Below, piece after piece: positions 4,348 to 38,077 of a DNA stretch of 64,000 bases. The position numbers and the translations under genes were made by a program. The notes beneath the pieces are model-generated. The model made no database searches and was not told the DNA's origin. It saw only the letters and a list, made by a program, of their open reading frames with translations. Numbering within the stretch: position 1 is the stretch's first letter; every line of letters starts with the position of its first letter. The DNA comes from Botryllus schlosseri (taxonomy: Eukaryota), in NCBI GenBank assembly GCA_051294905.1, contig CM119382.1, positions 25,854,001 to 25,918,000 on the forward strand, read 5' to 3'.

Positions 4348-5660
4348 TCAACGCCGAAGACAGTAAGCTACAAGCAAGTCGTTCAGATACCTACTGCTCC
4401 AGCACGACACACCCTTACTGAGTGATATCCAAAACTGTGACAACGGCTCGTCTTTATACTTAGACATCAGGGTGGCATCACAGTGCTTTCTCAATAATGT
4501 TAAGATTTCACTCATTAATATCGGTTGTACAAGATCGGTTGTACAAGGATTACCAATCAAGTAATTTCCCTTCCGCGGGTCTACACTTTCTGGAAAATAT
4601 TTGTCAAAACTGACCTGTAGCTGCTCTAAGTGTTGACATATAATAGCAAATAACTCCTGTGTGTCTACAGAAGCATTTGAAACGGCGTCTTCCATAGAGG
4701 GAAACATATCAATATCATCTTTCTCAACATTGTTCTTCGATAACATCAGTTTGTGTTTCAAGGCATCGGTTTTGTTACGCAGTGTAAATATGTTGGTGTG
4801 ATTACCTTGCGGCGACCTATTCAGGTCATTCATGCGGCTGAAAATTATTGCTAAATACGCTAGCTTTGCGGTACACATCTCATCTGATAAGCGTTCTTTT
4901 AGTGGAGAATTTGCCTCCAATAGAAACTGCTTGACTTTCACTCTCAACTCAAATAGTCGAGTAAGAACACATCCTCTCGAAAGCGATCTTACTTCCGCAT
5001 GAAGTAAACGATGATGATGTTGCGCACCCGGGCTATCGCACAAAGCCTCAAATGCACTTCTCGGCAACGTATATATTTTATAATTCTCACTGCGCCGTTC
5101 AGAACTTCGGTCAATTCAGGAGACATTTTTTGGCACATAAATTTTCCCGGTGAAGAATGCAATCTGTAACGAGTAGATCTGTGTTTGCCACTTTTTAATT
5201 TTCGCAGTTACACCCGAATAGCACCCCGTCATGTTAGCAGCATCGTCAGAGCAAACACCGACACATTTCCCCCAATCTAAACCCGGTTCTTGGACATAAG
5301 TATCAAGATATCGAAATAATTCTGAATTGGTCGTTCGTCCAGTTAGTGTAGGAACAAAGAAATTCGTCAATGATACTGCCTTCATTTTCATATCGAACAA
5401 AGCAAGCAAGTATTGCACAATTACTCAAATCAATGGATTCGTCAAGTTGTACAGCGAAATATTTCGAATTCTTTACTTGCTCAATAACTTGTTGTTCCAC
5501 ATCAACTGCCATATCCAATATTCTCCTTTGAATTGAATCATTTGATAGTGGCATGGCTTTAAGTTTGTTAGCTAGTTCCATACCCAAAACCTCTTTTGCA
5601 GCTGCTAACAGGCATGGATTTATTAAATCTTCTCTTATAGTAAAATGCTTTTACGCTTTG
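4348..5660 (-). pseudogene. hAT (Buster/Charlie, ZBED5/SCAND3-like) transposase, frameshifted
   Basis: Motifs LSNDSIQRRI, FAVQLDESIDLSN, CVGVCSDDAANMTG, LLLHAEVRSLSRG, KLAYLAIIF spread over three reading frames. Confidence 0.9.
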
Positions 5661-12525: not shown

Positions 12526-12765
12526 CAGCCGGCCATGAAATTTGGCTATGGCCGGCCATGAAATTTAGTCATGGCCGGCCATGAGAATGAGTTTGACATG
12601 GCCGGCCACGGAAATTTCATGGCCGGCCATACTGAAATTTCATGGCCGGCCATCAAAATCACCATGGCCGGCCACAGAATAGCACTTTTCATGGCCGGCC
12701 ACGGAATATCTGTGGCCGGCCACGAAATTTTCCGTGGCCAGTAAGTGGCCACGGGAATGCTGAAT
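12526..12765. repeat. Array of palindromic TGGCCGGCCA motifs
   Basis: About nine GGCCGGCC palindromes spaced by roughly 15-25 bp, often with GAAATTT; outlier motifs at about 11966-12006. Confidence 0.85.
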
Positions 12766-14300: not shown

Positions 14301-14590
14301 CAGACTTGTACAAACTAAACATTTAGTTAGTTGACGGTCAACTAACTAGCGATTTTTTGAGTAGTTCTAGTTCTAGTTGTAGTTGCGGATTTCGAAAATT
14401 GCGTGGTTCTAGTTCTAGTTGTAGTCGCGGATTTCGAAAATAGCGTAGTTCTAGTTCTAGTTGCGGATTTTGAAAATTCCGTAGTTCTAGTTCTAGTTGT
14501 AGTTGCAGATTTTGAAAATTCATTAGTTCTAGTTCTAGTTTTAGTTGCGCATTTAAAAAAAACATTAGTTGTCGAACAACTAGAAAACAC
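14301..14590. repeat. (GTTCTA)n / GCGGATTTCGAAAAT composite repeat with terminal hairpin, probable non-autonomous DNA transposon end
   Basis: Four units of about 39-45 bp at about 14360-14545; perfect 11-bp stem TAGTTAGTTGA-cgg-TCAACTAACTA near 14323-14347. Confidence 0.7.
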
Positions 14591-19560: not shown

Positions 19561-20244
19561 TTCAATCAATAAGCCCATTACATGGCCGTTCGGGTCACCT
19601 TCGAAGCTGACTCGTCAATCCGACTCTCTCGTTTTTGAAAAAAGAGAAAAAATCACACTGCTTCAATCCGTTCTACTATAGATAACTAACCTACGGATAG
19701 ATATACAACACCCGTCGTCACGCTTGCTTGCTCGGAGGAAAATACTGTTCAACAATCTGAACGCAACGTAATTGCCAATCCCACAGCTGACGACCCGAAC
19801 GCTCAAATTAAATAAATTTAATCTTATTTGAAAGCTACTGTCGCACTGATTCTGAAAATGTACTTTACAGTCTCATCAAGGCAATGGAACCATCCCGAAA
19901 TAGTCTTCTAAGTCTGAAAATCGGCATTGTTCTAAACAATCGCAGCGACGCACCACAATGGCCATAACAATGCCCCTTGCATGGTTGCGATTGTTCAGAA
20001 CAATGCCGATTTTCAGACTATGCGGTGTATTTCGAGGCGGTTCCATCGTCCTGATCTGATTTTAATCTATATTTTCGGAATCGGTGCGACAGTAGCTTTC
20101 AGATAAGATCAACTTTATTCAATTTGAGGGCTCGGGTCGTCAGCTATGGGATTGGCAATTACGTTGCGTTCAGATTGTTGAACAGTATTTTCCTCCGAGC
20201 AAGCAAGCGTGACGACGGGTGTTGTATATCTATCCGTAGGTTAG

Positions 20245-23200
20245 TGTACTATTCCTCACTATTCCTTATCTGTACTTTCCATCATTAGTTGATTGATCCA
20301 CGTTGATTACGCTCACTCTCCTTACGTAGTGCTGCGAGTAGGTAATCCGATGTCAGTTGCTCTAGCTAGGTGTTGGGTCTTGCGTTATCGTATTTGAACT
20401 GTTCCTATACTGTGTATCTCGTTTGTCGTCTGTTACAGAATAAGTTTAATAAAGCCTATCTCTAGGTCAGAACAATTTATTAACTTATTCATACGGCTTC
20501 AATGGACAAGGTTCTGAAACCTCGACGTCGAGCCAGGCTCGGAGACTGCTGCTGCTGAGTTCAAACATTGGCTTAAAACGTTCAACGACTACTTGGAGGC
20601 GTTAGCAGCCGCTGACTTACATCCAGACAAACTCAAGGTGCTAACAAATCTGATATCATTTCAAGTCTTCCGCAACATAGCTGATATTGATGATTACGAC
20701 CTTGCCATTGGTGCTCTGAAAGAGCTCTACGTGAAGCAGAAGAACACCATTGCGGCTAGGCATGAATTACTGACTTGCAAACAACTGCCTGGCGAAGCTA
20801 TAGACAGTTTTGTCATTCGACTGAAGTCACTCAGCAAAGACTGCGGGTGTCAGGCAGTTTCAGCTGAACAATATCGGTTGGAGCTGATTCGCGATGCCTT
20901 GATCGCTGGATTGCAATCACCGTCAATTCGCTAGAGACTTCTAGAAGAAAGCGCGTTGACTTTCGGCGATGCCTTCAAGAAGGCACGTGCAATGGAAATC
21001 GCTTCCCGGGATTCCAAAGCCTACCAACCGACTTCGTCATGTGCCACAAGACTGCATGCGCCGAGACAACAAGGCGGGGGCGAGACTCATAATGAAGATG
21101 GCAGCGCTCGCCGAAATCCAATCTCTTCGAAACGGCCTTGCTTCTTTTGTGGAGACGCGATGCATCCTCGCATGAATTGCCCGGCAAAAGATGCCGTATG
21201 CAGATATTGTTATATCACTGGCCATTATTCAAAGGTGTGTCAATCTCGCCTACGAAACCTTCCTCGAATCAATACGGAAACCGCGTCGATACAAGGTCCC
21301 GTACCTCCCAGCAGAGGAGAAATAGAATTTAACCCGAAAACGACTCTATCAGCTACTGATCGGTCTAGAGTACTATGCGATGTCAAGGTTGATAATTTGG
21401 ACGCAACTTCATTGATGGATACTGGTTCAGGGGAATGTTTCATGGATCAAAAATTTGCCGACAAATATCGAGAAAAATTGAACATCCAGCCAATCGTTGG
21501 CGAGGTCACGCTAGCGGAAACTTCTATACGCATGCCGATTGAAGGTCAGTGCCTCGCTCGCCTCATTGTGGGGAATAACGACTATCGAAATGTTTCGTTT
21601 CACATACTGAAGAACTTGGCAACTGACGTCATCATCGGCGAAAGAATTTTCAAGGAACACGAAAGCGTCACATTCACGTTTTCGGGACGGCGGCCTCCGC
21701 TCACCCTGGATGCCTTATCAAAAATGGCAGTTCCTTATCCGAAACCATTCAGTCACCTTAGCAAGGATTGCCGCCCTGTTGCGGACAAACAACGGAGATA
21801 CTCACGGGCAGATCTCGCCTTTATCGCAGAAGAAACGCAACGTCTACTTGCTGACAATCTTATCGAGCCAAGTAATTCGCCCTGGAGAGCTCAGGAACTC
21901 GTTGTCAAAAACGAACACTCTACCAAACGACGAATGGTCATTGATTACAGCAGGACAATTAACAGATTCACTCAACTCGACGCTTATCCGCTGCCACGCA
22001 TCGAGGACATTGTGAATAAGCTTGCTCAGTATAAGATATTCACAACAGTTGACTTGAAATCGGCATATCATCAACTCGAACTGGATCCGCGTGACCGAGA
22101 ATTTACTGCCTTCCAGTCAGGAAGCGAGTTGTTTCAGTGGCGACGACTTCCTTTTGGTCTGACAAATGCTGTACCTGAATTTCAACGAACAATCGATTAC
22201 ATTGTCAAGCAGAATAACCTGAAAGGCTGTTTTCCGCATCTGGACGATATAACAATCGCTGGGATGAATCAGGTTGATCACGACAACAATGTGAAGGCCT
22301 TCATGAACGCTGCTTCACGCGCCAATCTTACCATCAACGAAGCTAAGACGCAACTTGCTAAGTCCGAAATAGCTATTTTGGGGTACAAGGTCGGACACCA
22401 GTCTGTTCAGCCGGATCCAAAGAGAGTGACACCGCTCCTAAATCTCCCATATCCGGAATCTCAGCTTCAGTTGAAGAGGATGATAGGGTTGTTCGCCTAC
22501 TACGCTAGATGGATTGCAAATTACTCGACTAAAATCGGACCGCTAATCAAAGCCACGATTCCTTTAGACAACGATTCCCGTGAAGCAATTGCTCTCATCA
22601 AACAAAACCTGGCCAACGCCGCATTACGACCCATCAATGAATCTATGCCCTTCACAGTAGAAACTGACGCTTCAGATTTTGCGATCGCCGCAACCTTGAA
22701 TCAGGAACGCCGCCCCGTTGCATTTCACTCGCGCACCCTATCGCCAGGCGAACAACGACATTCGGCTGTTGAAAAGGAAGCATATGCTGTGGTCGAAGCG
22801 CTACGGAAGTGGAGGCATTTGCTCACCGGGCGGCATTTTACATTCGTCACTGACCAGAAAAGTGTCTCCTTTATGTTCGACAATCGACACACCAGCAAAA
22901 TCAAAAACGACAAAATCGCTCGTTGGCGATTGGAACTAATGACGTTTAGCTATACTGTCATTCATCGGCCCGGCGTGGAAAATGTCGGCCCCGACGCTCT
23001 AACGCGCGCCCATTGCGGATACATGGGAAAACACCACTTGCGCGATCTGCACATTTCACTCTGTCACCCTGGCGTGACCCGCATGTCTCACTTCGTACGA
23101 GTCAAGAATTTGCCATTCTCCATGTCAGAGATACGTACCATGACTTCACAGTGCGAAGAATGTCAGCAAATCAAACCGCAGTTCATTCGCTCCTACGAGG

Positions 23201-24398
23201 AGAAACTAATCAAGGCGACTCAACCCTTCGAACGTCTCAGCCTCGATTTCAAGGGTCCGTTACCCAGCGTTACGAAAAACAGGTATTTCCTCACTATCGT
23301 CGATGAATATTCACGATTTCCATTTGCATTTCCCTGCGCAGACATGTCTGCGAAGACGGTTATCAAATGCTTAACGACACTGTTTTCTGTATTTGGGATG
23401 AGTTCATACATACATTCCGACCGATGGTCGTCTTTCCAGTCTTACGAACTCAAATCTTGGCTCAACTCTAAAGAGGTTTCTACGAGCAGGACCACTAGCT
23501 ACAACCCTCGTGGAAACGGACGATGTGAAAAGTACAACGGCGTGATCTGGAAGGCGATTCAATGCTCGTTGAAATCTCGACGTCTTCCTCTCGGCCATTG
23601 GGAGGATGTGCTATTGGACGCTCTACATTCAATTCGGTCGTTGCTGTGCACATCAACAAATTGCACTCCTCACGAGAGAATGTTTCATCACTCTCGCCGC
23701 TCGACAAATGGCACCTCCATTCCGTCATGGGTGAAACCGGGTCCTATCTATGTCAAGCGACATGTGCGAAATAAAGACGAACCCTTGGTGGATGAGGCGG
23801 AGCTCCTCGAGACAAACCCTGCTTACGCCCATGTCAGGCTTAACGACGGCAGGGAAACTACGGTATCGGTTCGGGATATTTCACCGCGCAATTGCACCGA
23901 CGTAACCAGCAGAGCTGAATTCAGTAACCACAGCCCGAGTGAAGATTGTTCTGGTGGACAAGTCTATAACGAAGACGCCACGATTCGTGATGCTACCATT
24001 GCCACTAGCACCAACGAAGGAAATAACGAAAGTTCGCAACCGAACATTGAACCTGAAAAATCACCGCTTCGTCGTTCACCGCGCGTTCGAAAGGCCGTAG
24101 ATCGATATGGCGCAGTACCCTATTATTGACAATGTATCACACTTTGTTTCGCAAATATTTTACGGGGGGAGAATTTACTATTCCTTATCTGTACTTTCCA
24201 TCATTAGTTGATTGATTCACGTTGATTACGCTCACTCTCCTTACGTAGTGCTGCGAGTAGGTAATCCGATGTCAGTTGCTCTAGCTAGGTGTTGGGTCTT
24301 GCGTTATCGTATTTGAACTGTTCTGTTCCTATACTGTGTATCTCGTTTGTCGTCTGTTACAGAATAAGTTTAATAAAGCCTATCTCTAGGTCAGAACA
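20245..24398 (+). mobile_element. Gypsy/Ty3 LTR retrotransposon, near full length
   Basis: LTRs 20245-20474 (TG...CA) and 24174-24398, nearly identical; 5-bp TSD GTTAG; polypurine tract GGGGGGAGAA at 24164-24173; domain order gag-PR-RT-RH-IN. Confidence 0.97.
20502..24129 (+). pseudogene. gag-pol polyprotein with an early frameshift and an in-frame TAG at 20932-20934
   Basis: MDKVLKP start then shift to DVEPGSETAAAEFKHW; CCHC knuckle CFFCGDAMHPRMNC; protease DTGS; RT HLDD; RNase H ETDAS; integrase HHCC and DFKGP. Confidence 0.93.
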
Positions 24399-24499
24399 GT
24401 TAGTTATCTATAGTTCTACAGAGTCGCTTGGAGACGACTTGTGCAGTACCGGTACTTGGAAAACGAATCCACCAGACTACTGCTATCTACCACCATTTC

Positions 24500-28250: not shown

Positions 28251-28254
28251 CCTG

Positions 28255-28920
28255 AATTTCATGGTCTGTGATTTTGATTGTGGCGTCATACTTTGCCTTT
28301 TTGGTTTTGCTTTTAAACCTGTTCAAATCCCTTCAGTGTGCCGATAACTCTTGAAAAGAGGCACCCGAAAAGTCTTCGAGTTTAATAAATATACTGCTAC
28401 AATGGATGTTGTATTGAAAGCTATATTCAAGTTCTGTACCACGAACCAGCTATTTAAGTACTTCCGGAAAGGGCACAGTGTCGCTCAGCTGAACAAATTG
28501 AATTTGTTAGTCAAGAGCCGAGGGAAGATCAGAGCTTTGCGGTCGTCAATAGATCACCTAAAGAAATGCGTCGAACTACGGGTAGTTCCGAAGCGCATCA
28601 GGATTAGAATCGACAAGTCTCGCGCTCGACATAGCCCCAACATCGAACGGGCATTTCTTTTCGATGAGATCGAGAAAAAGAAATCTTCTATACCACACTG
28701 GTGGAAGAAATGTCGATCACTTCAACAAGAAGTCAGAGATTTCCTGTCATTTTTTGACTTGATGCGTTTTTGCCGTTACCTGAGTATCATTGACACTCGC
28801 AAGGAAAAGGAGAACCAGAGGAAGTATGACCGTATCCTCAAAGTTTTATTTCAAAATCGGTTTGGAAATTCGCCAAGTACGGGGAAGAATATCATAGCAA
28901 ATCTTTCGAGTTATAAACTC
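28255..28920 (+). mobile_element. Penelope-like element: pLTR plus 5-prime part of ORF
   Basis: Nearly identical to the reverse complement of 31915-32570 and, in its first part, to the pLTR at 33945-34110. Confidence 0.9.
28346..28382 (+). ncRNA. Minimal type I hammerhead ribozyme motif, U3-A8 core variant
   Basis: Stem I AACUC/GAGUU, core UUGAAAA, short helix II, GAAA, helix III AAG-U-CUU, cleavage triplet UUC. Confidence 0.65.
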
Positions 28921-32609: not shown

Positions 32610-34110
32610 CATCTTTCTTGAATATTTCTTGAATTGTTGCAAACTGCTACTAGTAGCGTTGAATTCAGCTTCAATGACACGATGTTCCGTCAATGTAACG
32701 GTATTGCGATGGGTTTACCGTTGGGACCTAGTCTGGCCGATATATTCGTGGGATACCATGAAAGAAATTGTCTGAAAACGTCGCAAAGCCTCTCCTCTAT
32801 TTTAGATATGTCGATGACACCTTTGTTGCCTTTAAAAATGAGCGAGAGTGTAATAATTTCTTCGAAAAATTGAATTGTCTCCATCCAGCTCTACAATTTA
32901 CCATGAAAAAGGAAACTGATGCTGCCCTTCCCTTTTTAGACGTCTTAGTAGAGAGATCAGGACAAACGTTTTTAACGTCGGTGTACAGAAAACCTACTTT
33001 CACTGGTCATTATATTCGTTGGGATTCATTCTGCCCGAAGCGGCGTAAATTAGGATTCATTCTGCCCGAAGCGGCGTAAATTAAACCTCATTTCATCTCG
33101 CGTTAATCGCGCCTTGCGCCTCTGCTCACTGGATAAACTGTTACGCGAATTGGATGATATCCACTTGATTCTCTCCAAAAATGGCTATCCAGACCACATA
33201 TTAAAATGCTCCATCTCTAGGGTATTGAAAAAATCGGATACAGCTCCAATATATGACCCAGAAAAATGCCCGGCATTTTTACACCTACCTTTGCTAGGTA
33301 ATGTGTCTAGCCGATTTGAAAAGCTTATTAAATCGGCTGTTCACCGTTGCTATTACAGCGTTAACACGCATGTAGTGTACACGACGAAACCCTTGTTACC
33401 CAACTCTCGAAAAGATGTACTTCCTGCCTTTGATGCAAGTAATGTTGTTTACCAATACAAGTGCCACTGTGATAGTAGGTATGTAGGACGTACATCTCAA
33501 AGATTGTTTGAGCGTATTAAGCAGCATATCCCAAAATTGATTCTGTCAAAAACATGCGCAAATGATCGCACGGAGCTCGCACGTCAGTGTAAATTGGCTG
33601 GAAAAACAGACTGCTATGATGAGTGCCAAGCATATGCTTCGTCAATCGGTCAGCGTCTGAGCGAAAACCTTGCCTGAGCACAGCACTATGATGACAATAT
33701 GTTCACTGTCATTGCGCGTGGTAGGTCTGTGTTTCATTCAAAAGTGTTGGAGTCTACTATTATTCAGTTGAGATAACCTATTTTATGCAGACAGAAAGAT
33801 TTTCTCTATAACCTACAAATTTCAAATTAGTGCGTGTTGTTCCGTGCGTGTAATTGTTTATTTACAAATTGTGCTGTTACCATAGTACCGTATGTCCGTA
33901 TACTTCGTAGGTTGTTTGTTATTGTTGCCATTGATACAATGCGAATTTCATGGTCTGTGATCTTGATTGTTGCGTCATACTGTGCCTCTTTGGTTTTGCT
34001 TTTAAATCTGTTTAAATCCCTTCAGTGTGCCGATAACTCTTGAAAAAAAGCACCCGAGAAGTCTTCGAGTTTAATAAATATACTGCTACAATGGATGTTG
34101 TATTGAAAGC
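32610..34110 (+). mobile_element. Penelope-like element RT 3-prime half, GIY-YIG endonuclease and pLTR
   Basis: GIAMGLPLGPSLADIF, RYVDDTF, LPFLDVLV, VYRKPTFTG; VVYQYKC..YVGRTSQRLFERIKQH; pLTR with degenerate hammerhead at 34035-34071. Confidence 0.92.
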
Positions 34111-34226
34111 TTTCTTGAGTCGTTGTTGCATTTCAGAACACAACAATCATAGTGTGATCTTCCTGTCACAGTCCACGATCCCGCATCTGCATTCATGTCT
34201 GTTATCTCACAGGCAATACAGTATAA

Positions 34227-35317
34227 AGCCTAGTGCACATTTGCGTAATTCGTACGCGCGTACTGGACGCGTAAAGTATTTTGGTAGTTTCTTTCCTTTC
34301 TCTGCTCTTCTCTCGTTTGCTCGTCGCGTAAAGAGCCTCTTTTCTCTCGTTTTTTTTACGCGGGCATTACGCGGACCTTACGCGGAGAGAGCGATTCGTA
34401 CGCGCGTATTGTTGACTTGCCAAGCTCCCAATCAGATATAGCTTCCAAATATGGTCCAGAAAAATGCCCGGCATTTTTACACCTACCTTGGCTAGGTAAC
34501 GTGTCTAACCGTTTTGAAAAGCTTATTAAATCGGCTGTTCACCGTTGTTATTTCAGCGTTAACAGTTAACACGCATGTGGTGTAGCCTACACGACGAAAT
34601 CCTTGTTGCCCAGCTCTCGAAAATATGTACTCCCTGCCTTTAATGCAAGCAATGTTGTCTACCAATACAAGTGCCACTGTGATAAGATTGTTTGAGCGTA
34701 TTAAGCAGCATATCCCTTAACTGATTCGGCCAAAAACATGCGCAAATGATCGTACGGAGCTCGCATGTCAGTGCAAATTGGCTACCAGACAGCTAACAGA
34801 CTGCTATGACGATTACCAAGCATATGCTTCATCAATTGGTCAGTATCTGAGTGAAAACCTCGCCAGTGCACAGCACTATATATCTTTACTGTCATTGCGC
34901 GTGGCAGATCTTTGTTTCATTTAAAAGTGTTGGAGTCTACTATTATTCAGTTGGACAAACCTATTTTATGCAGACGAAAAGATTTCCTTGATAACCTACA
35001 TTTTTCTCATTAGTGTGTGTAAATCTTTTCGTCTGCATAAAATAGGTTTACTGTTTATTTACAAATTGCGTCGCTATTATAGTACCGTATGTCCGTATAC
35101 AGTAAAGTATCTTACTGTTGCCATTGATACAATGCGAATTTCATGGTCTGTGATTTTGATTGTTGCGTTGCTGACACTCGGCAGCGACAACATGCGGCAC
35201 AGCGCTAAATTTGTTCTCACTTTTCCTTCAGCGATGACGTAACCTCTCGTTTTGGCCAACTTAGTGAGAGAGTGAAAATCGTACGCGCGTACGAATTACG
35301 CAAATGTGCACTAGGCT
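34227..35317. mobile_element. PIF/Harbinger-type MITE
   Basis: 37-bp perfect TIR AGCCTAGTGCACATTTGCGTAATTCGTACGCGCGTAC; 3-bp TAA TSD; related internal sequence at about 15890-16025 on the minus strand. Confidence 0.88.
34432..35168 (+). mobile_element. 5-prime truncated Penelope-like copy (GIY-YIG plus part of pLTR) inside the Harbinger MITE
   Basis: Colinear with 33237-33975 with scattered substitutions and deletions. Confidence 0.85.
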
Positions 35318-35819: not shown

Positions 35820-36045
35820 CTGTACGGCGTTTGGCGTCTGTTGTGGTGAGACGCCGAGTAGCTATACGGCGTTTGGCGTCTGTTATGTTCAGACGCCGAG
35901 TAGCTATACGGCGTTTGGCGTCTGTTATATTCAGACGCCGAGTAGCTACACGGCGTTTGGCGTCTGTTATGTTCAGACGCCGAGTAGCTACACGGCGTTT
36001 GGCCTCTGGTATGTTGAGACGCCTAGTAGCTATACGGCGTTTGGT
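35820..36045. repeat. Subterminal 42-bp tandem repeat
   Basis: Unit AGACGCCGAGTAGCTATACGGCGTTTGGCGTCTGTTATGTTC, about five copies; one related unit at about 39245-39290. Confidence 0.95.
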
Positions 36046-36679: not shown

Positions 36680-36915
36680 TATGAAATAGGCAACGAAACC
36701 ACAGCAGAAGGCAATGAAACCACGGTAAAAGTCATTAAGAAATAAGCAGTGGAACCACAGTAAAAGTAAAAGAAATGAGCAATCGAACGACAGGAAACGT
36801 CATTGAGAAATCAGCAGTGGAACCACAGTAAAAATGACTGAGAAATAAGCATTGGAACCATAATAAAAGTCACAAAGAAATAAGCAGTGGAACCACAGTA
36901 AAAGTCAGAGAAATA
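36680..36915. repeat. Degenerate minisatellite of about 35 bp
   Basis: Recurrent GAAATAAGCAGTGGAACCACAGTAAAA units. Confidence 0.7.
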
Positions 36916-38077
36916 AGCAAGCACATACAACCGACTCCACAAATCTGAGCTTTTCGCATTCCGCTCACTTCAAGGACTCCAGCACACCTTGCACAAACAG
37001 TTTCTTCTGGCGCCAATTCTGAAATTATTCCTTCCTTCAAATATTCATTAGGTATCTTTTCCGGGATCAGTTTATGCTCGAGAAAATACTTCATATTCAA
37101 TTGCATGTCATCAGTAGGAGGTTGAGTACTGTAAATCAAATATTAAGACTCTAAATATGGAATCTTCGAAAGTCATGCAATGAAGATTACCTCGACATAC
37201 ATGATATGAGATCTGGTTCAGTCTGGAACACATACCATTTCGCCAGTGTGATGTGCAAGAATGTTCCAGTTTTCCAAGAGCACAGACATGACCATGAGCC
37301 TCCGTCAACGTCAAATGTCACCCGCACTCTTTCACTAGGACTATAGTATGTCTTCTCGCCAGTGAAGATAGAATAATACTTGTATTTCTTCGAAATATTG
37401 AATGCTTCAAAATTCGCATGCACCACGAGTGGAGCATTGCATTGCACACTCCTCATTCTTTCATTGCTGCATTTTTCACTAGTTGCGGTTGATATTAGCT
37501 TCATTTCAACGAGGGTGTTCAAAACCTTTTCATCTAAATCAATGTTTGCACATGGACGTGCATTTTCTACAGCATCTAAATGATCACATTGGACCCCGGG
37601 ATTTTTGTCCTTGAGGGTCCCAAAAATTGATATACAGTCTTTGTCTTCACACCCAATCAGGCTTCTTAATAAATGCTTCGTAACGTGCAAAGGAGCAGCT
37701 TGGCCTGATGATCCTTGGGAGACCATAAACACACCATTTTTCGGATCAATACAAACTGCAGGAAGGGTTGCTGGAAGGCCGTGGGCACCTCGTTCATGTC
37801 TTGTCAAGCCATGAGACCTTGCATATGACTTGTCGCATTTGGTGCATTGCTTTTTACTTTTGCTATCTGTCGGTTGATTTAAACGACGAGTCTTGCTTTC
37901 CTTGTTTGGTGGCGGATTGCCACATACTTTTTGTAAATGACTTTCAAATGTACCACGTCGACCAAGAACTTTAGTGCAGGTATGGCAGTGGTAGTGACTC
38001 CTGCCTCTGGCCTGACCAATACGTTCCATACACTTCAAACGGCATGGTACGATATAGCCTGGAATATGTGAATACAA
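36915..38077 (-). pseudogene. C2H2 zinc fingers, SWIM-like and CxC module of an HMGXB3/Zisupton-like protein; frameshifted
   Basis: HYHCHTCTKV...HLQKVC, CTKCDKSYARSHGLTRHERGAH, AVCIDPKNGVFMV..G...PLHV.K, WSCLC, PEETVCARC; no catalytic transposase domain visible. Confidence 0.7.

What the first reader, a model, noticed from the sequence alone, without database searches (positions are those of the whole stretch)
20438..20490. Gypsy element with no tRNA PBS but a self-complementary primer site
Seen: after the 5-prime LTR there is no TGG-type PBS; 20476-20490 (TTTATTAACTTATTC) is the reverse complement of LTR positions 20438-20453 (GAATAAGTTTAATAAA) with one bulged T. The 22-nt loop holds a small CCTA/TAGG hairpin, and a TATA-like stretch lies about 30 bp upstream of 20438. 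Established: Tf1/sushi chromoviruses self-prime by pairing the transcript 5-prime end with the PBS. Inference: this element, with no visible chromodomain and a Mag-like gag start, may represent an independent or little-described self-priming lineage in which the primer overlaps the polyadenylation signal.
Basis: partly seen in the sequence, partly recalled or inferred. Interest (0 to 1): 0.8.

Follow-up and report, generated by a model that had tools for sequence, protein, structure and literature searches.

The report
Self-priming Gypsy retrotransposon, no tRNA site
This broken jumping gene has no tRNA primer site; the site instead pairs with a piece of the element's own end repeat, as in many related families in several animal groups, so the group probably starts copying itself with its own RNA, as the yeast element Tf1 does.

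Summary

- **The element.** It is a complete but defective 4.15-kb Ty3/gypsy insertion at 20245-24398, with 230/225-nt LTRs and a 5-bp target duplication (GTTAG).
- **The pairing.** One base after the 5' LTR, 20476-20490 is the reverse complement of LTR 20438-20453, which ends in AATAAA. The "bulged T" is a 1-nt deletion private to this copy. Most other copies pair perfectly over 16-17 nt.
- **Related families.** All 13 families sampled in this genome (gag 35-46% identical; many copies have intact ORFs and 98-100% identical LTRs) have a 10-18-nt exact complement at the same place. So do relatives from a damselfly, an isopod, a sea anemone and uncharacterised contigs. A whipworm relative pairs 15 of 16. 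Each family has its own sequence. Control windows never exceed 10 nt.
- **No tRNA site.** There is no TGG-type site, no room for another primer site, and no chromodomain.
- **Best reading (about 0.78).** Tf1-like self-priming, with a primer that ends in the poly(A) signal.
- **Not shown.** The transcription start (RNA reads were too few), the RNase H cut, and the lineage's position relative to Tf1/sushi or Mag.
- **Prior work.** I found no paper describing this. The scan reached the same reading before on other DNA of this genome (s1-300841, s1-234245, s1-286538).

The parts
20240..20244 (+). Target-site duplication GTTAG, left copy
   Evidence: The same 5 nt follow the 3' LTR at 24399-24403. 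Solo LTRs of the family also have 5-bp duplications (L023 TGCAT, L028 TTGGG, L029 ATAGT).
20245..20474 (+). 5' LTR, 230 nt, TGTACT...AGAACA
   Evidence: Aligned with the 3' LTR. The start was fixed from other copies, where the polypurine tract is followed by TGTACT.
20406..20409 (+). TATA, 32 nt upstream of the paired segment (possible promoter element; inferred)
   Evidence: Seen in the sequence. A TATA lies 27-31 nt before the paired segment in only 4 of 18 families, so support is weak.
20437..20453 (+). Proposed self-primer: (A)GAATAAGTTTAATAAA. In the RNA it would pair with the primer site and be cut off after AAUAAA.
   Evidence: Exact complement of the site in other copies, 16-17 nt. The 16-mer has 50 exact places in the genome, none at a scored tRNA gene.
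20448..20453 (+). AATAAA poly(A) signal, forming the 3' end of the proposed primer
   Evidence: Seen in the sequence. The paired segment ends in AATAAA(A) in most families; three sampled families are exceptions.
20454..20467 (+). Small hairpin GCCTA-TCTC-TAGGT in the loop. An RCC(T)...(A)GGY stem directly after the primer recurs in most families.
   Evidence: Folds. Energies are not significant on their own (z about -1).
20476..20490 (+). Primer-binding site, self-complementary type. It lacks one A compared with other copies.
   Evidence: It starts 2 nt after the LTR end (ACA + A), as in most elements examined.
20502..24129 (+). gag-pol reading frame (gag with two CCHC knuckles, protease, RT, RNase H, integrase). 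It is broken by a frameshift just after 20519 (8 nt missing compared with other copies) and by an in-frame TAG at 20932-20934.
   Evidence: Translation, Pfam, copy alignment. Other copies have open frames of 1246 aa. The nearest solved structure is Ty3 RT/RNase H, E 2e-56.
24164..24173 (+). Polypurine tract GGGGGGAGAA, the plus-strand primer
   Evidence: Lies directly before the 3' LTR here and in other copies.
24174..24398 (+). 3' LTR, 225 nt. It starts TTT instead of TGT, has one instead of two 10-nt ACTATTCCTY units, and carries an extra CTGTT.
24399..24403 (+). Target-site duplication GTTAG, right copy

Best explanation
The window holds a dead copy of a small (about 4.15 kb) Ty3/gypsy LTR retrotransposon without a chromodomain. 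It belongs to a large group of animal elements that most likely start reverse transcription with their own RNA rather than a host tRNA.

Proposed steps:
1. Transcription starts in the 5' LTR at or upstream of 20437 (inferred).
2. An 11-18-nt segment of the RNA, usually ending in AAUAAA(A), folds back onto the site that begins 2 nt after the LTR (pairing shown; that it forms in vivo is inferred).
3. The element's RNase H cuts the RNA at the loop-side end of the duplex, after AAUAAA (inferred by analogy with Tf1).
4. RT extends this 3' end through the short rest of R-U5, about 22 nt in this family, to make minus-strand strong-stop DNA (inferred).
5. That DNA jumps to the 3' R (inferred).
6. Later the plus strand copies the primer back into the site. 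This would keep the two arms exactly complementary in each family (inferred).

The hairpin may also mask the promoter-proximal poly(A) signal at the 5' end.
For: - **Position.** The complementary site sits exactly where a primer-binding site must be, starting 2 nt after the LTR's terminal CA in most elements examined. In this family only 11 nt lie between it and the gag ATG, so there is no room for another site.
- **Strength.** Other copies pair perfectly over 16-17 nt. The window hairpin has z -5.7. Control windows reach at most 10 nt (mean 5.8, n = 4370), against 10-18 nt observed in 17 of 19 elements; the two exceptions have a single mismatch or a misplaced LTR end.
- **Family-specific matched changes.** In 17 families, every stem position shows 2-4 different Watson-Crick pair types. 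Outside the AATAAA part, an element's own arms match 8.9 of 10 positions, against 4.8 of 10 for arms taken from different families. Sister families differ by double changes, for example TTTTAGTCAATAAAA/TTTTATTGACTAAAA against TTTAGTGAATAAAA/TTTTATTCACTAAA.
- **Breadth.** The same layout occurs in Ischnura (16 nt), Armadillidium (14 nt), Trichuris (15 of 16), Actinostola (13 nt), two Logan contigs (18 and 16 nt) and a relative only 35% identical in pol (15 nt).
- **The families look recently active.** LTRs are 98-100% identical and many copies have open frames of 1206-1279 aa. The layout is therefore the working one.
- **No tRNA signature.** There is no TGG, and the site differs from family to family, so no common host primer fits. 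The 16-mer is found only in element copies among the places checked. Rfam finds nothing.
- **Precedent.** Self-priming of this geometry is established for Tf1/Tf2 and proposed for Tj1, the sushi group, plant Tcn1 and TAR copia elements (PMC4600332, PMC5341516, PMC6317226).
Against: - No transcription start, primer cleavage or strong-stop cDNA has been observed. The one reads call gave 0-25 reads per run, all inside LTR sequence and none past the LTR end.
- The start of the complementarity carries no conserved initiator motif. A TATA at the right distance occurs in only 4 of 18 families.
- The rest of R after the primer would be very short in this family, at most 21 nt.
- The tRNA check is partial: 63 scored genes by position only, and no mitochondrial genome in the assembly.
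- One distant relative (L057, 34% identical) shows no significant pairing, although its contig holds only part of the LTR.
- This copy itself is dead, so nothing can be tested on it directly.
Confidence: 0.78

Rival explanations
1. The hairpin serves only to hide the promoter-proximal AAUAAA, so the RNA is not cut and polyadenylated at the 5' LTR. Because the complement lies outside the LTR, the signal would stay open at the 3' end. Priming would be done by something else.
For: In most families the paired segment ends exactly in AATAAA(A). The complement is present only downstream of the 5' LTR.
Against: Three sampled families (L031/L032, L034, L049) pair through a segment that does not contain their AATAAA. 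No other primer site exists between the LTR and gag. The constant 2-nt offset from the LTR end, and strict Watson-Crick complementarity of 10-18 nt in each family, are what a copied primer site would give; they are more than masking would need. The two roles could coexist.
Confidence: 0.08
2. The site binds a host RNA, such as a tRNA fragment, a mitochondrial tRNA or another small RNA, that happens to resemble the LTR segment.
For: Internal tRNA parts and half-tRNAs are known primers in some Ty1/copia lineages (PMC6317226). The tRNA set of this genome could not be read in full.
Against: The site differs between families and always follows that family's own LTR. It is about 80% A+T and has no TGG. 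All 50 exact places of the 16-mer lie away from the 63 scored tRNA genes. No tRNA was found in 320 kb of held sequence.
Confidence: 0.03
3. The stem is a structural signal for packaging, dimerisation or translation control of the genomic RNA and is unrelated to priming.
For: Leader hairpins with such roles are common in retroviruses. An inner stem next to the duplex recurs in most families.
Against: It does not explain the lack of any other primer site or the fixed position next to the LTR end. It also does not explain exact complementarity across families that are very divergent.
Confidence: 0.05
4. Chance inverted repeat in A+T-rich sequence, or a misplaced LTR boundary.
For: The sequence is A+T-rich, and the window copy shows only 9 + 6 paired bases with a bulge.
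Against: z -5.7. Controls reach at most 10 nt. The pairing recurs across families and phyla. The LTR ends are fixed by the target duplications.
Confidence: 0.01

Closest known systems
Tf1/Tf2 of Schizosaccharomyces pombe, Tj1 of S. japonicus, and the Tf1/sushi group (self-primed Ty3/gypsy chromoviruses)
   Same: There is no tRNA site. The site just after the 5' LTR is complementary to a segment of the element's own LTR-derived RNA. A second stem lies next to the duplex. The overall proposed mechanism is the same (PMC4600332, PMC5341516).
   Different: No chromodomain. The hosts are animals, including insects, crustaceans, a nematode and a cnidarian. The primer is 11-18 nt and usually ends in the AAUAAA signal, so the rest of R-U5 is only about 20-70 nt. 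That the paired segment is the first bases of the transcript, as in Tf1, is unknown here. Nothing is shown by experiment. Relatedness to this group was not tested.
[quoted passage not shown]
   Same: Self-priming was inferred from sequence alone, because a tRNA-type site is missing and an LTR-complementary site is present (PMC6317226). This shows the trait occurs in more than one lineage.
   Different: Different superfamily or clade and different hosts. No link to the poly(A) signal is reported there.
Mag lineage of Ty3/gypsy (Bombyx Mag, mosquito Mag-like elements)
   Same: Small elements with a single gag-pol frame and no env or chromodomain. LTRs are short (about 200 nt) with TGT...ACA ends, a clear AATAAA and no conserved TATA, as described for Mag A LTRs (PMC3601003).
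   Different: Mosquito Mag-lineage elements are reported with sites complementary to tRNA-Leu or tRNA-Ser (PMC3286476). Here no tRNA-type site exists. Phylogenetic membership was not tested.
Poly(A) hairpin and promoter-proximal poly(A)-site occlusion of retroviruses such as HIV-1 (from general knowledge)
   Same: An AAUAAA close to the cap lies within a stem.
   Different: Here the complementary strand lies outside the LTR, at the primer-site position, so the stem can form only at the 5' end.

Membership tests
Ty3/gypsy (Metaviridae) LTR retrotransposon | Pol domain order protease - RT - RNase H - integrase | tested here: met
   Pfam finds gag-asp_proteas, RVT_1, RT_RNaseH, RT_RNaseH_2, Integrase_H2C2 and rve in that order. 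The nearest solved chain is Ty3 RT/RNase H, E 2e-56.
Ty3/gypsy (Metaviridae) LTR retrotransposon | Paired LTRs with TG...CA ends, a target-site duplication, and a polypurine tract before the 3' LTR | tested here: met
   LTRs at 20245-20474 and 24174-24398, TSD GTTAG, PPT at 24164-24173.
tRNA-primed LTR element | A site next to the 5' LTR that starts TGG and is complementary to a tRNA 3' end | tested here: not met
   No TGG lies between the LTR end and gag. The site differs in each family and matches that family's own LTR. The 16-mer is not at any of the 63 scored tRNA genes.
Self-priming LTR retrotransposons (works like Tf1) | The primer site is complementary to the element's own LTR-derived RNA, and this is conserved with matched changes in relatives | tested here: met
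Self-priming LTR retrotransposons (works like Tf1) | The complementary segment lies within the transcript, at its 5' end in Tf1 | tested here: inconclusive
   RNA reads of four runs gave 0-25 reads, none beyond the LTR. A TATA at -27 to -31 occurs in 4 of 18 families.
Self-priming LTR retrotransposons (works like Tf1) | RNase H cuts the RNA duplex to release the primer, and the cDNA carries that primer | not testable with these tools
   This needs biochemistry or mapping of cDNA ends.
Tf1/sushi group (chromoviruses) | Chromodomain at the integrase C-terminus | tested here: not met
   No chromodomain hit at E <= 0.01 in the 1064-aa pol piece. None is listed among the precomputed Pfam domains of the 120 best homologues.
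Tf1/sushi group (chromoviruses) | RT/integrase phylogeny places the element inside the group | not tested
   No reference sequences of Tf1, sushi or other named clades could be obtained.
Mag lineage | RT/RNase H/integrase phylogeny clusters with Mag | not tested
   No reference sequences were available. Only the LTR features resemble those described for Mag A (PMC3601003).
Mag lineage | tRNA-Leu or tRNA-Ser primer site, as reported for mosquito members | tested here: not met
   PMC3286476, set.

The most novel reading that the evidence does not exclude
An ancient, animal-wide lineage of chromodomain-less Gypsy elements acquired self-priming independently of Tf1/sushi. It built the primer out of its own poly(A) signal. 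One hairpin would then both hide the 5' AAUAAA and, after RNase H cleavage right behind it, prime reverse transcription. This would free the lineage from host tRNAs and from defences based on tRNA fragments.
Probability: 0.4. Interest if true: 0.75.

Novelty: new variant of a known kind. Interest (0 to 1): 0.65.

Why it matters
- **Reach of the mechanism.** Self-priming is an established but seemingly rare way to start reverse transcription. In the papers I could search it is tied to Tf1/sushi chromoviruses and a few plant lineages. A large, apparently active, chromodomain-less group in insects, crustaceans, nematodes and cnidarians would make it a mainstream strategy in animals.
- **Annotation.** LTR annotation pipelines that demand a tRNA-type primer site would mis-score these elements.
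- **Host defence.** Such elements would escape host control aimed at tRNA primer sites, the subject of PMC7472051.
- **Evolution.** It bears on the proposal that hairpin priming preceded tRNA priming in LTR elements (PMC3601003).
- **3'-end formation.** Fusing the primer with the AAUAAA signal gives a concrete, testable link between 3'-end formation and priming.

Tried and rejected
- **RNA reads for the transcription start.** Four raw RNA runs were laid on an intact family copy (L003:1330-2130). They gave 0-25 reads, all within LTR sequence and mostly running on into other flanks. None crossed into the primer site or gag.
- **Logan contigs of 3.6-4.3 kb as possible transcripts.** They turned out to be LTR-plus-internal contigs of the circular-overlap kind. 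Their ends say nothing about RNA ends. They were useful only as extra families.
- **tRNA comparison.**
  - ARAGORN found no tRNA in the window or in 320 kb of held loci.
  - There is no COX1 and so no mitochondrial contig in the assembly.
  - Only a position check of the exact 16-mer was possible.
- **Rfam scan of the element.** No family matched at E <= 1.
- **Promoter motifs at the start of the complementarity.** There is no conserved initiator, and a TATA at the right distance in only 4 of 18 families. This is weak support only.
- **Inner stem after the primer.** It recurs as RCC(T)...(A)GGY, but the folding energies do not differ from shuffles. I did not claim it as shown.
- **Distant relative L057 (34% identical).** The pairing is no better than controls, and the contig lacks part of the LTR. 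Inconclusive.
- **Degenerate sister copies L015, L018 and L019.** They have 2-4 mismatches in the stem. They are old broken copies and tell nothing either way.
- **Literature.** Levin 1995 and Lin & Levin 1998 are not held. Six full-text searches found no report of self-priming in animal chromodomain-less Gypsy elements. Subscription journals are not covered.
- **Clade naming by phylogeny.** This was not possible without reference sequences.

Full report
**What is in the window.**
- The finding lies at the 5' end of a complete LTR retrotransposon insertion at 20245-24398 (4154 bp). The LTRs are 20245-20474 and 24174-24398.
- I fixed their limits from other copies, in which the polypurine tract GGGGGGAGAA is followed directly by TGTACT. 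I also used the 5-bp target duplications: GTTAG on both sides here, and TGCAT, TTGGG and ATAGT around three solo LTRs.
- The inside encodes one gag-pol frame with two CCHC knuckles, protease, RT, RNase H and integrase in Ty3/gypsy order, and no chromodomain. The nearest solved protein is Ty3 RT/RNase H.
- The copy is dead. Eight bases are missing just after 20519 compared with other copies, which shifts the frame. There is an in-frame TAG at 20932-20934. One base is missing in the primer site. The 3' LTR starts TTT instead of TGT.

**The observation.**
- GAATAAGTTTAATAAA (20438-20453) and TTTATTAACTTATTC (20476-20490) are complementary with one bulge, as reported.
- The RNA hairpin is far more stable than shuffles: -14.3 against -3.8 +/- 1.8 kcal/mol, z -5.7.
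- The small loop hairpin and a TATA 32 nt upstream are there. No TGG-type site is present, and only 11 nt lie between the site and the gag ATG.

**Other copies of the same family.**
- The genome (495 Mb) holds at least 42 matches to this LTR/junction.
- Most of the other full junction copies read TTTATTAAACTTATTC(T), a perfect 16-17-nt complement of (A)GAATAAGTTTAATAAA. The bulge is therefore a private deletion of the window copy.
- The 16-mer occurs 50 times in the genome, against 2 for the reversed control. Five places show both arms perfect and 38 nt apart.

**Related families.**
- A six-frame search with the gag piece found at least 150 matches. They fall into many families 35-46% identical in gag, and many have open frames of 1206-1279 aa.
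- I fetched twenty elements. Nineteen had LTR pairs of 160-260 nt that were 98-100% identical, giving elements of about 4.1-4.3 kb. These families look recently active.
- In all of them the bases right after the 5' LTR (ACA, one A, then the site) are the reverse complement of an LTR segment 32-85 nt before the LTR end. The exact complement is 10-18 nt in 17 of 19. The other two are explained by a single mismatch and a misplaced LTR end.
- The sequences differ from family to family. Examples: TTTTCAGTTAATAAAA/TTTTATTAACTGAAAA, TTCTATGTTGCTTAAA/TTTAAGCAACATAGAA and AATATTAAAGTAG/CTACTTTAATATT.
- As a control I took 4370 internal 30-nt windows of the same elements. Their longest exact complement to the element's own LTR averages 5.8 nt and never exceeds 10.
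- Counted from the loop side, every stem position shows 2-4 different Watson-Crick pair types among 17 families.
- Outside the AATAAA part, an element's own arms match 8.9 of 10 positions. Arms taken from different families match 4.8 of 10.

**Other animals.**
- Homologues 46-51% identical over about 1200 aa occur in records named Trichuris, Ischnura, Armadillidium, Macrosiphum, Cyamophila and Actinostola.
- I fetched four of these and found the same layout:

| Source | Pairing | Notes |
|---|---|---|
| Ischnura | 16 nt | |
| Armadillidium | 14 nt | |
| Trichuris | 15 of 16 nt | |
| Actinostola | 13 nt | 100% identical LTRs, TSD ATAAG |
| Logan contig L055 | 18 nt | |
| Logan contig L056 | 16 nt | |
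| L058, 35% identical in pol | 15 nt | 1 of 167 control windows pairs as well |
| L057, 34% identical | not significant | contig holds only part of the LTR |

**How it most likely works.**
- The site lies where a primer-binding site must lie, nothing else could serve, and it follows each family's own LTR. A common host primer is therefore excluded.
- The established model for this geometry is Tf1/Tf2. There a segment of the RNA's own 5' region pairs with the site, the element's RNase H cuts it free, and RT extends it (PMC4600332, PMC5341516).
- Applied here, the primer would be the 11-18-nt segment that usually ends in AAUAAA(A), and the cut would fall right behind it.
- Strong-stop DNA would then cover only the remaining 22 nt (this family) to about 70 nt of R-U5.
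- Copying the primer back during plus-strand synthesis would explain why the arms stay exactly complementary in every family.
- Only the pairing, its position and its conservation are shown. The transcription start, the cut and the cDNA are inferred.
- The hairpin can form only at the 5' end, so it may also mask the promoter-proximal poly(A) signal. This cannot be its only role: three sampled families pair through a segment that lies upstream of their AATAAA.

**What could not be settled.**
- RNA reads from four runs gave almost nothing, and none beyond the LTR.
- The tRNA check was limited to positions, because no more genome letters could be fetched.
- No reference sequences were available for a tree. 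Whether the lineage is Mag-like, or arose independently of Tf1/sushi, is open. Mosquito Mag-lineage elements are reported with tRNA-Leu or tRNA-Ser sites (PMC3286476).

**Known or new.**
- In the papers I could search, self-priming is described for Tf1/Tf2/Tj1 and the sushi group. It is listed for several fungal elements and predicted for plant Tcn1 and TAR.
- Six full-text searches found no report for chromodomain-less animal Gypsy elements.
- I rate it a new variant of a known kind.
- Earlier notes of this scan on other pieces of the same genome reached the same reading. I re-derived the evidence independently here.

Noticed in passing
window 19678-20252: A 275-nt inverted repeat (arms 19678-19952 and 19978-20252, 87% complementary, 25-nt spacer) that looks like a foldback or MITE-type element. 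The Gypsy element is inserted right at the end of its right arm.
   Followed up: partly
window 14357-14554, 35823-36044, 36711-36920, 12528-12730: Several short tandem arrays with periods of 42, 42, 35/70 and 23/93 nt. The last is rich in GGCCGGCC.
   Followed up: no
window 33232-35020 and 28254-28427 / 33943-34116: A roughly 1.19-kb tandem duplication (86-92% alike) and a 174-nt repeat 5.7 kb apart.
   Followed up: no
window 20245-20270 and 24174-24189; loci L002-L029: The family's LTR exists with one or two copies of a 10-nt unit (ACTATTCCTY) at its start. The window copy has two in the 5' LTR and one in the 3' LTR, although both LTRs should be copied from the same template.
   Followed up: partly
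G000 C13:4572165-4577382 and C8:3605478-3610711: Some copies of the same family have LTRs about 5.1 kb apart instead of 3.9 kb. The extra 1.2 kb or so was not examined.
   Followed up: no
L052 1-1296 and 5267-5904: The Actinostola element (LTRs 1296-1484 and 5082-5270) sits inside a long array of a 53-nt satellite.
   Followed up: no
L003:1384-1599 (reads of runs X19, X23): The few RNA reads that hit the family cover only LTR sequence and run on into unrelated flanks. They probably come from solo LTRs inside host transcripts rather than from element transcripts.
   Followed up: partly
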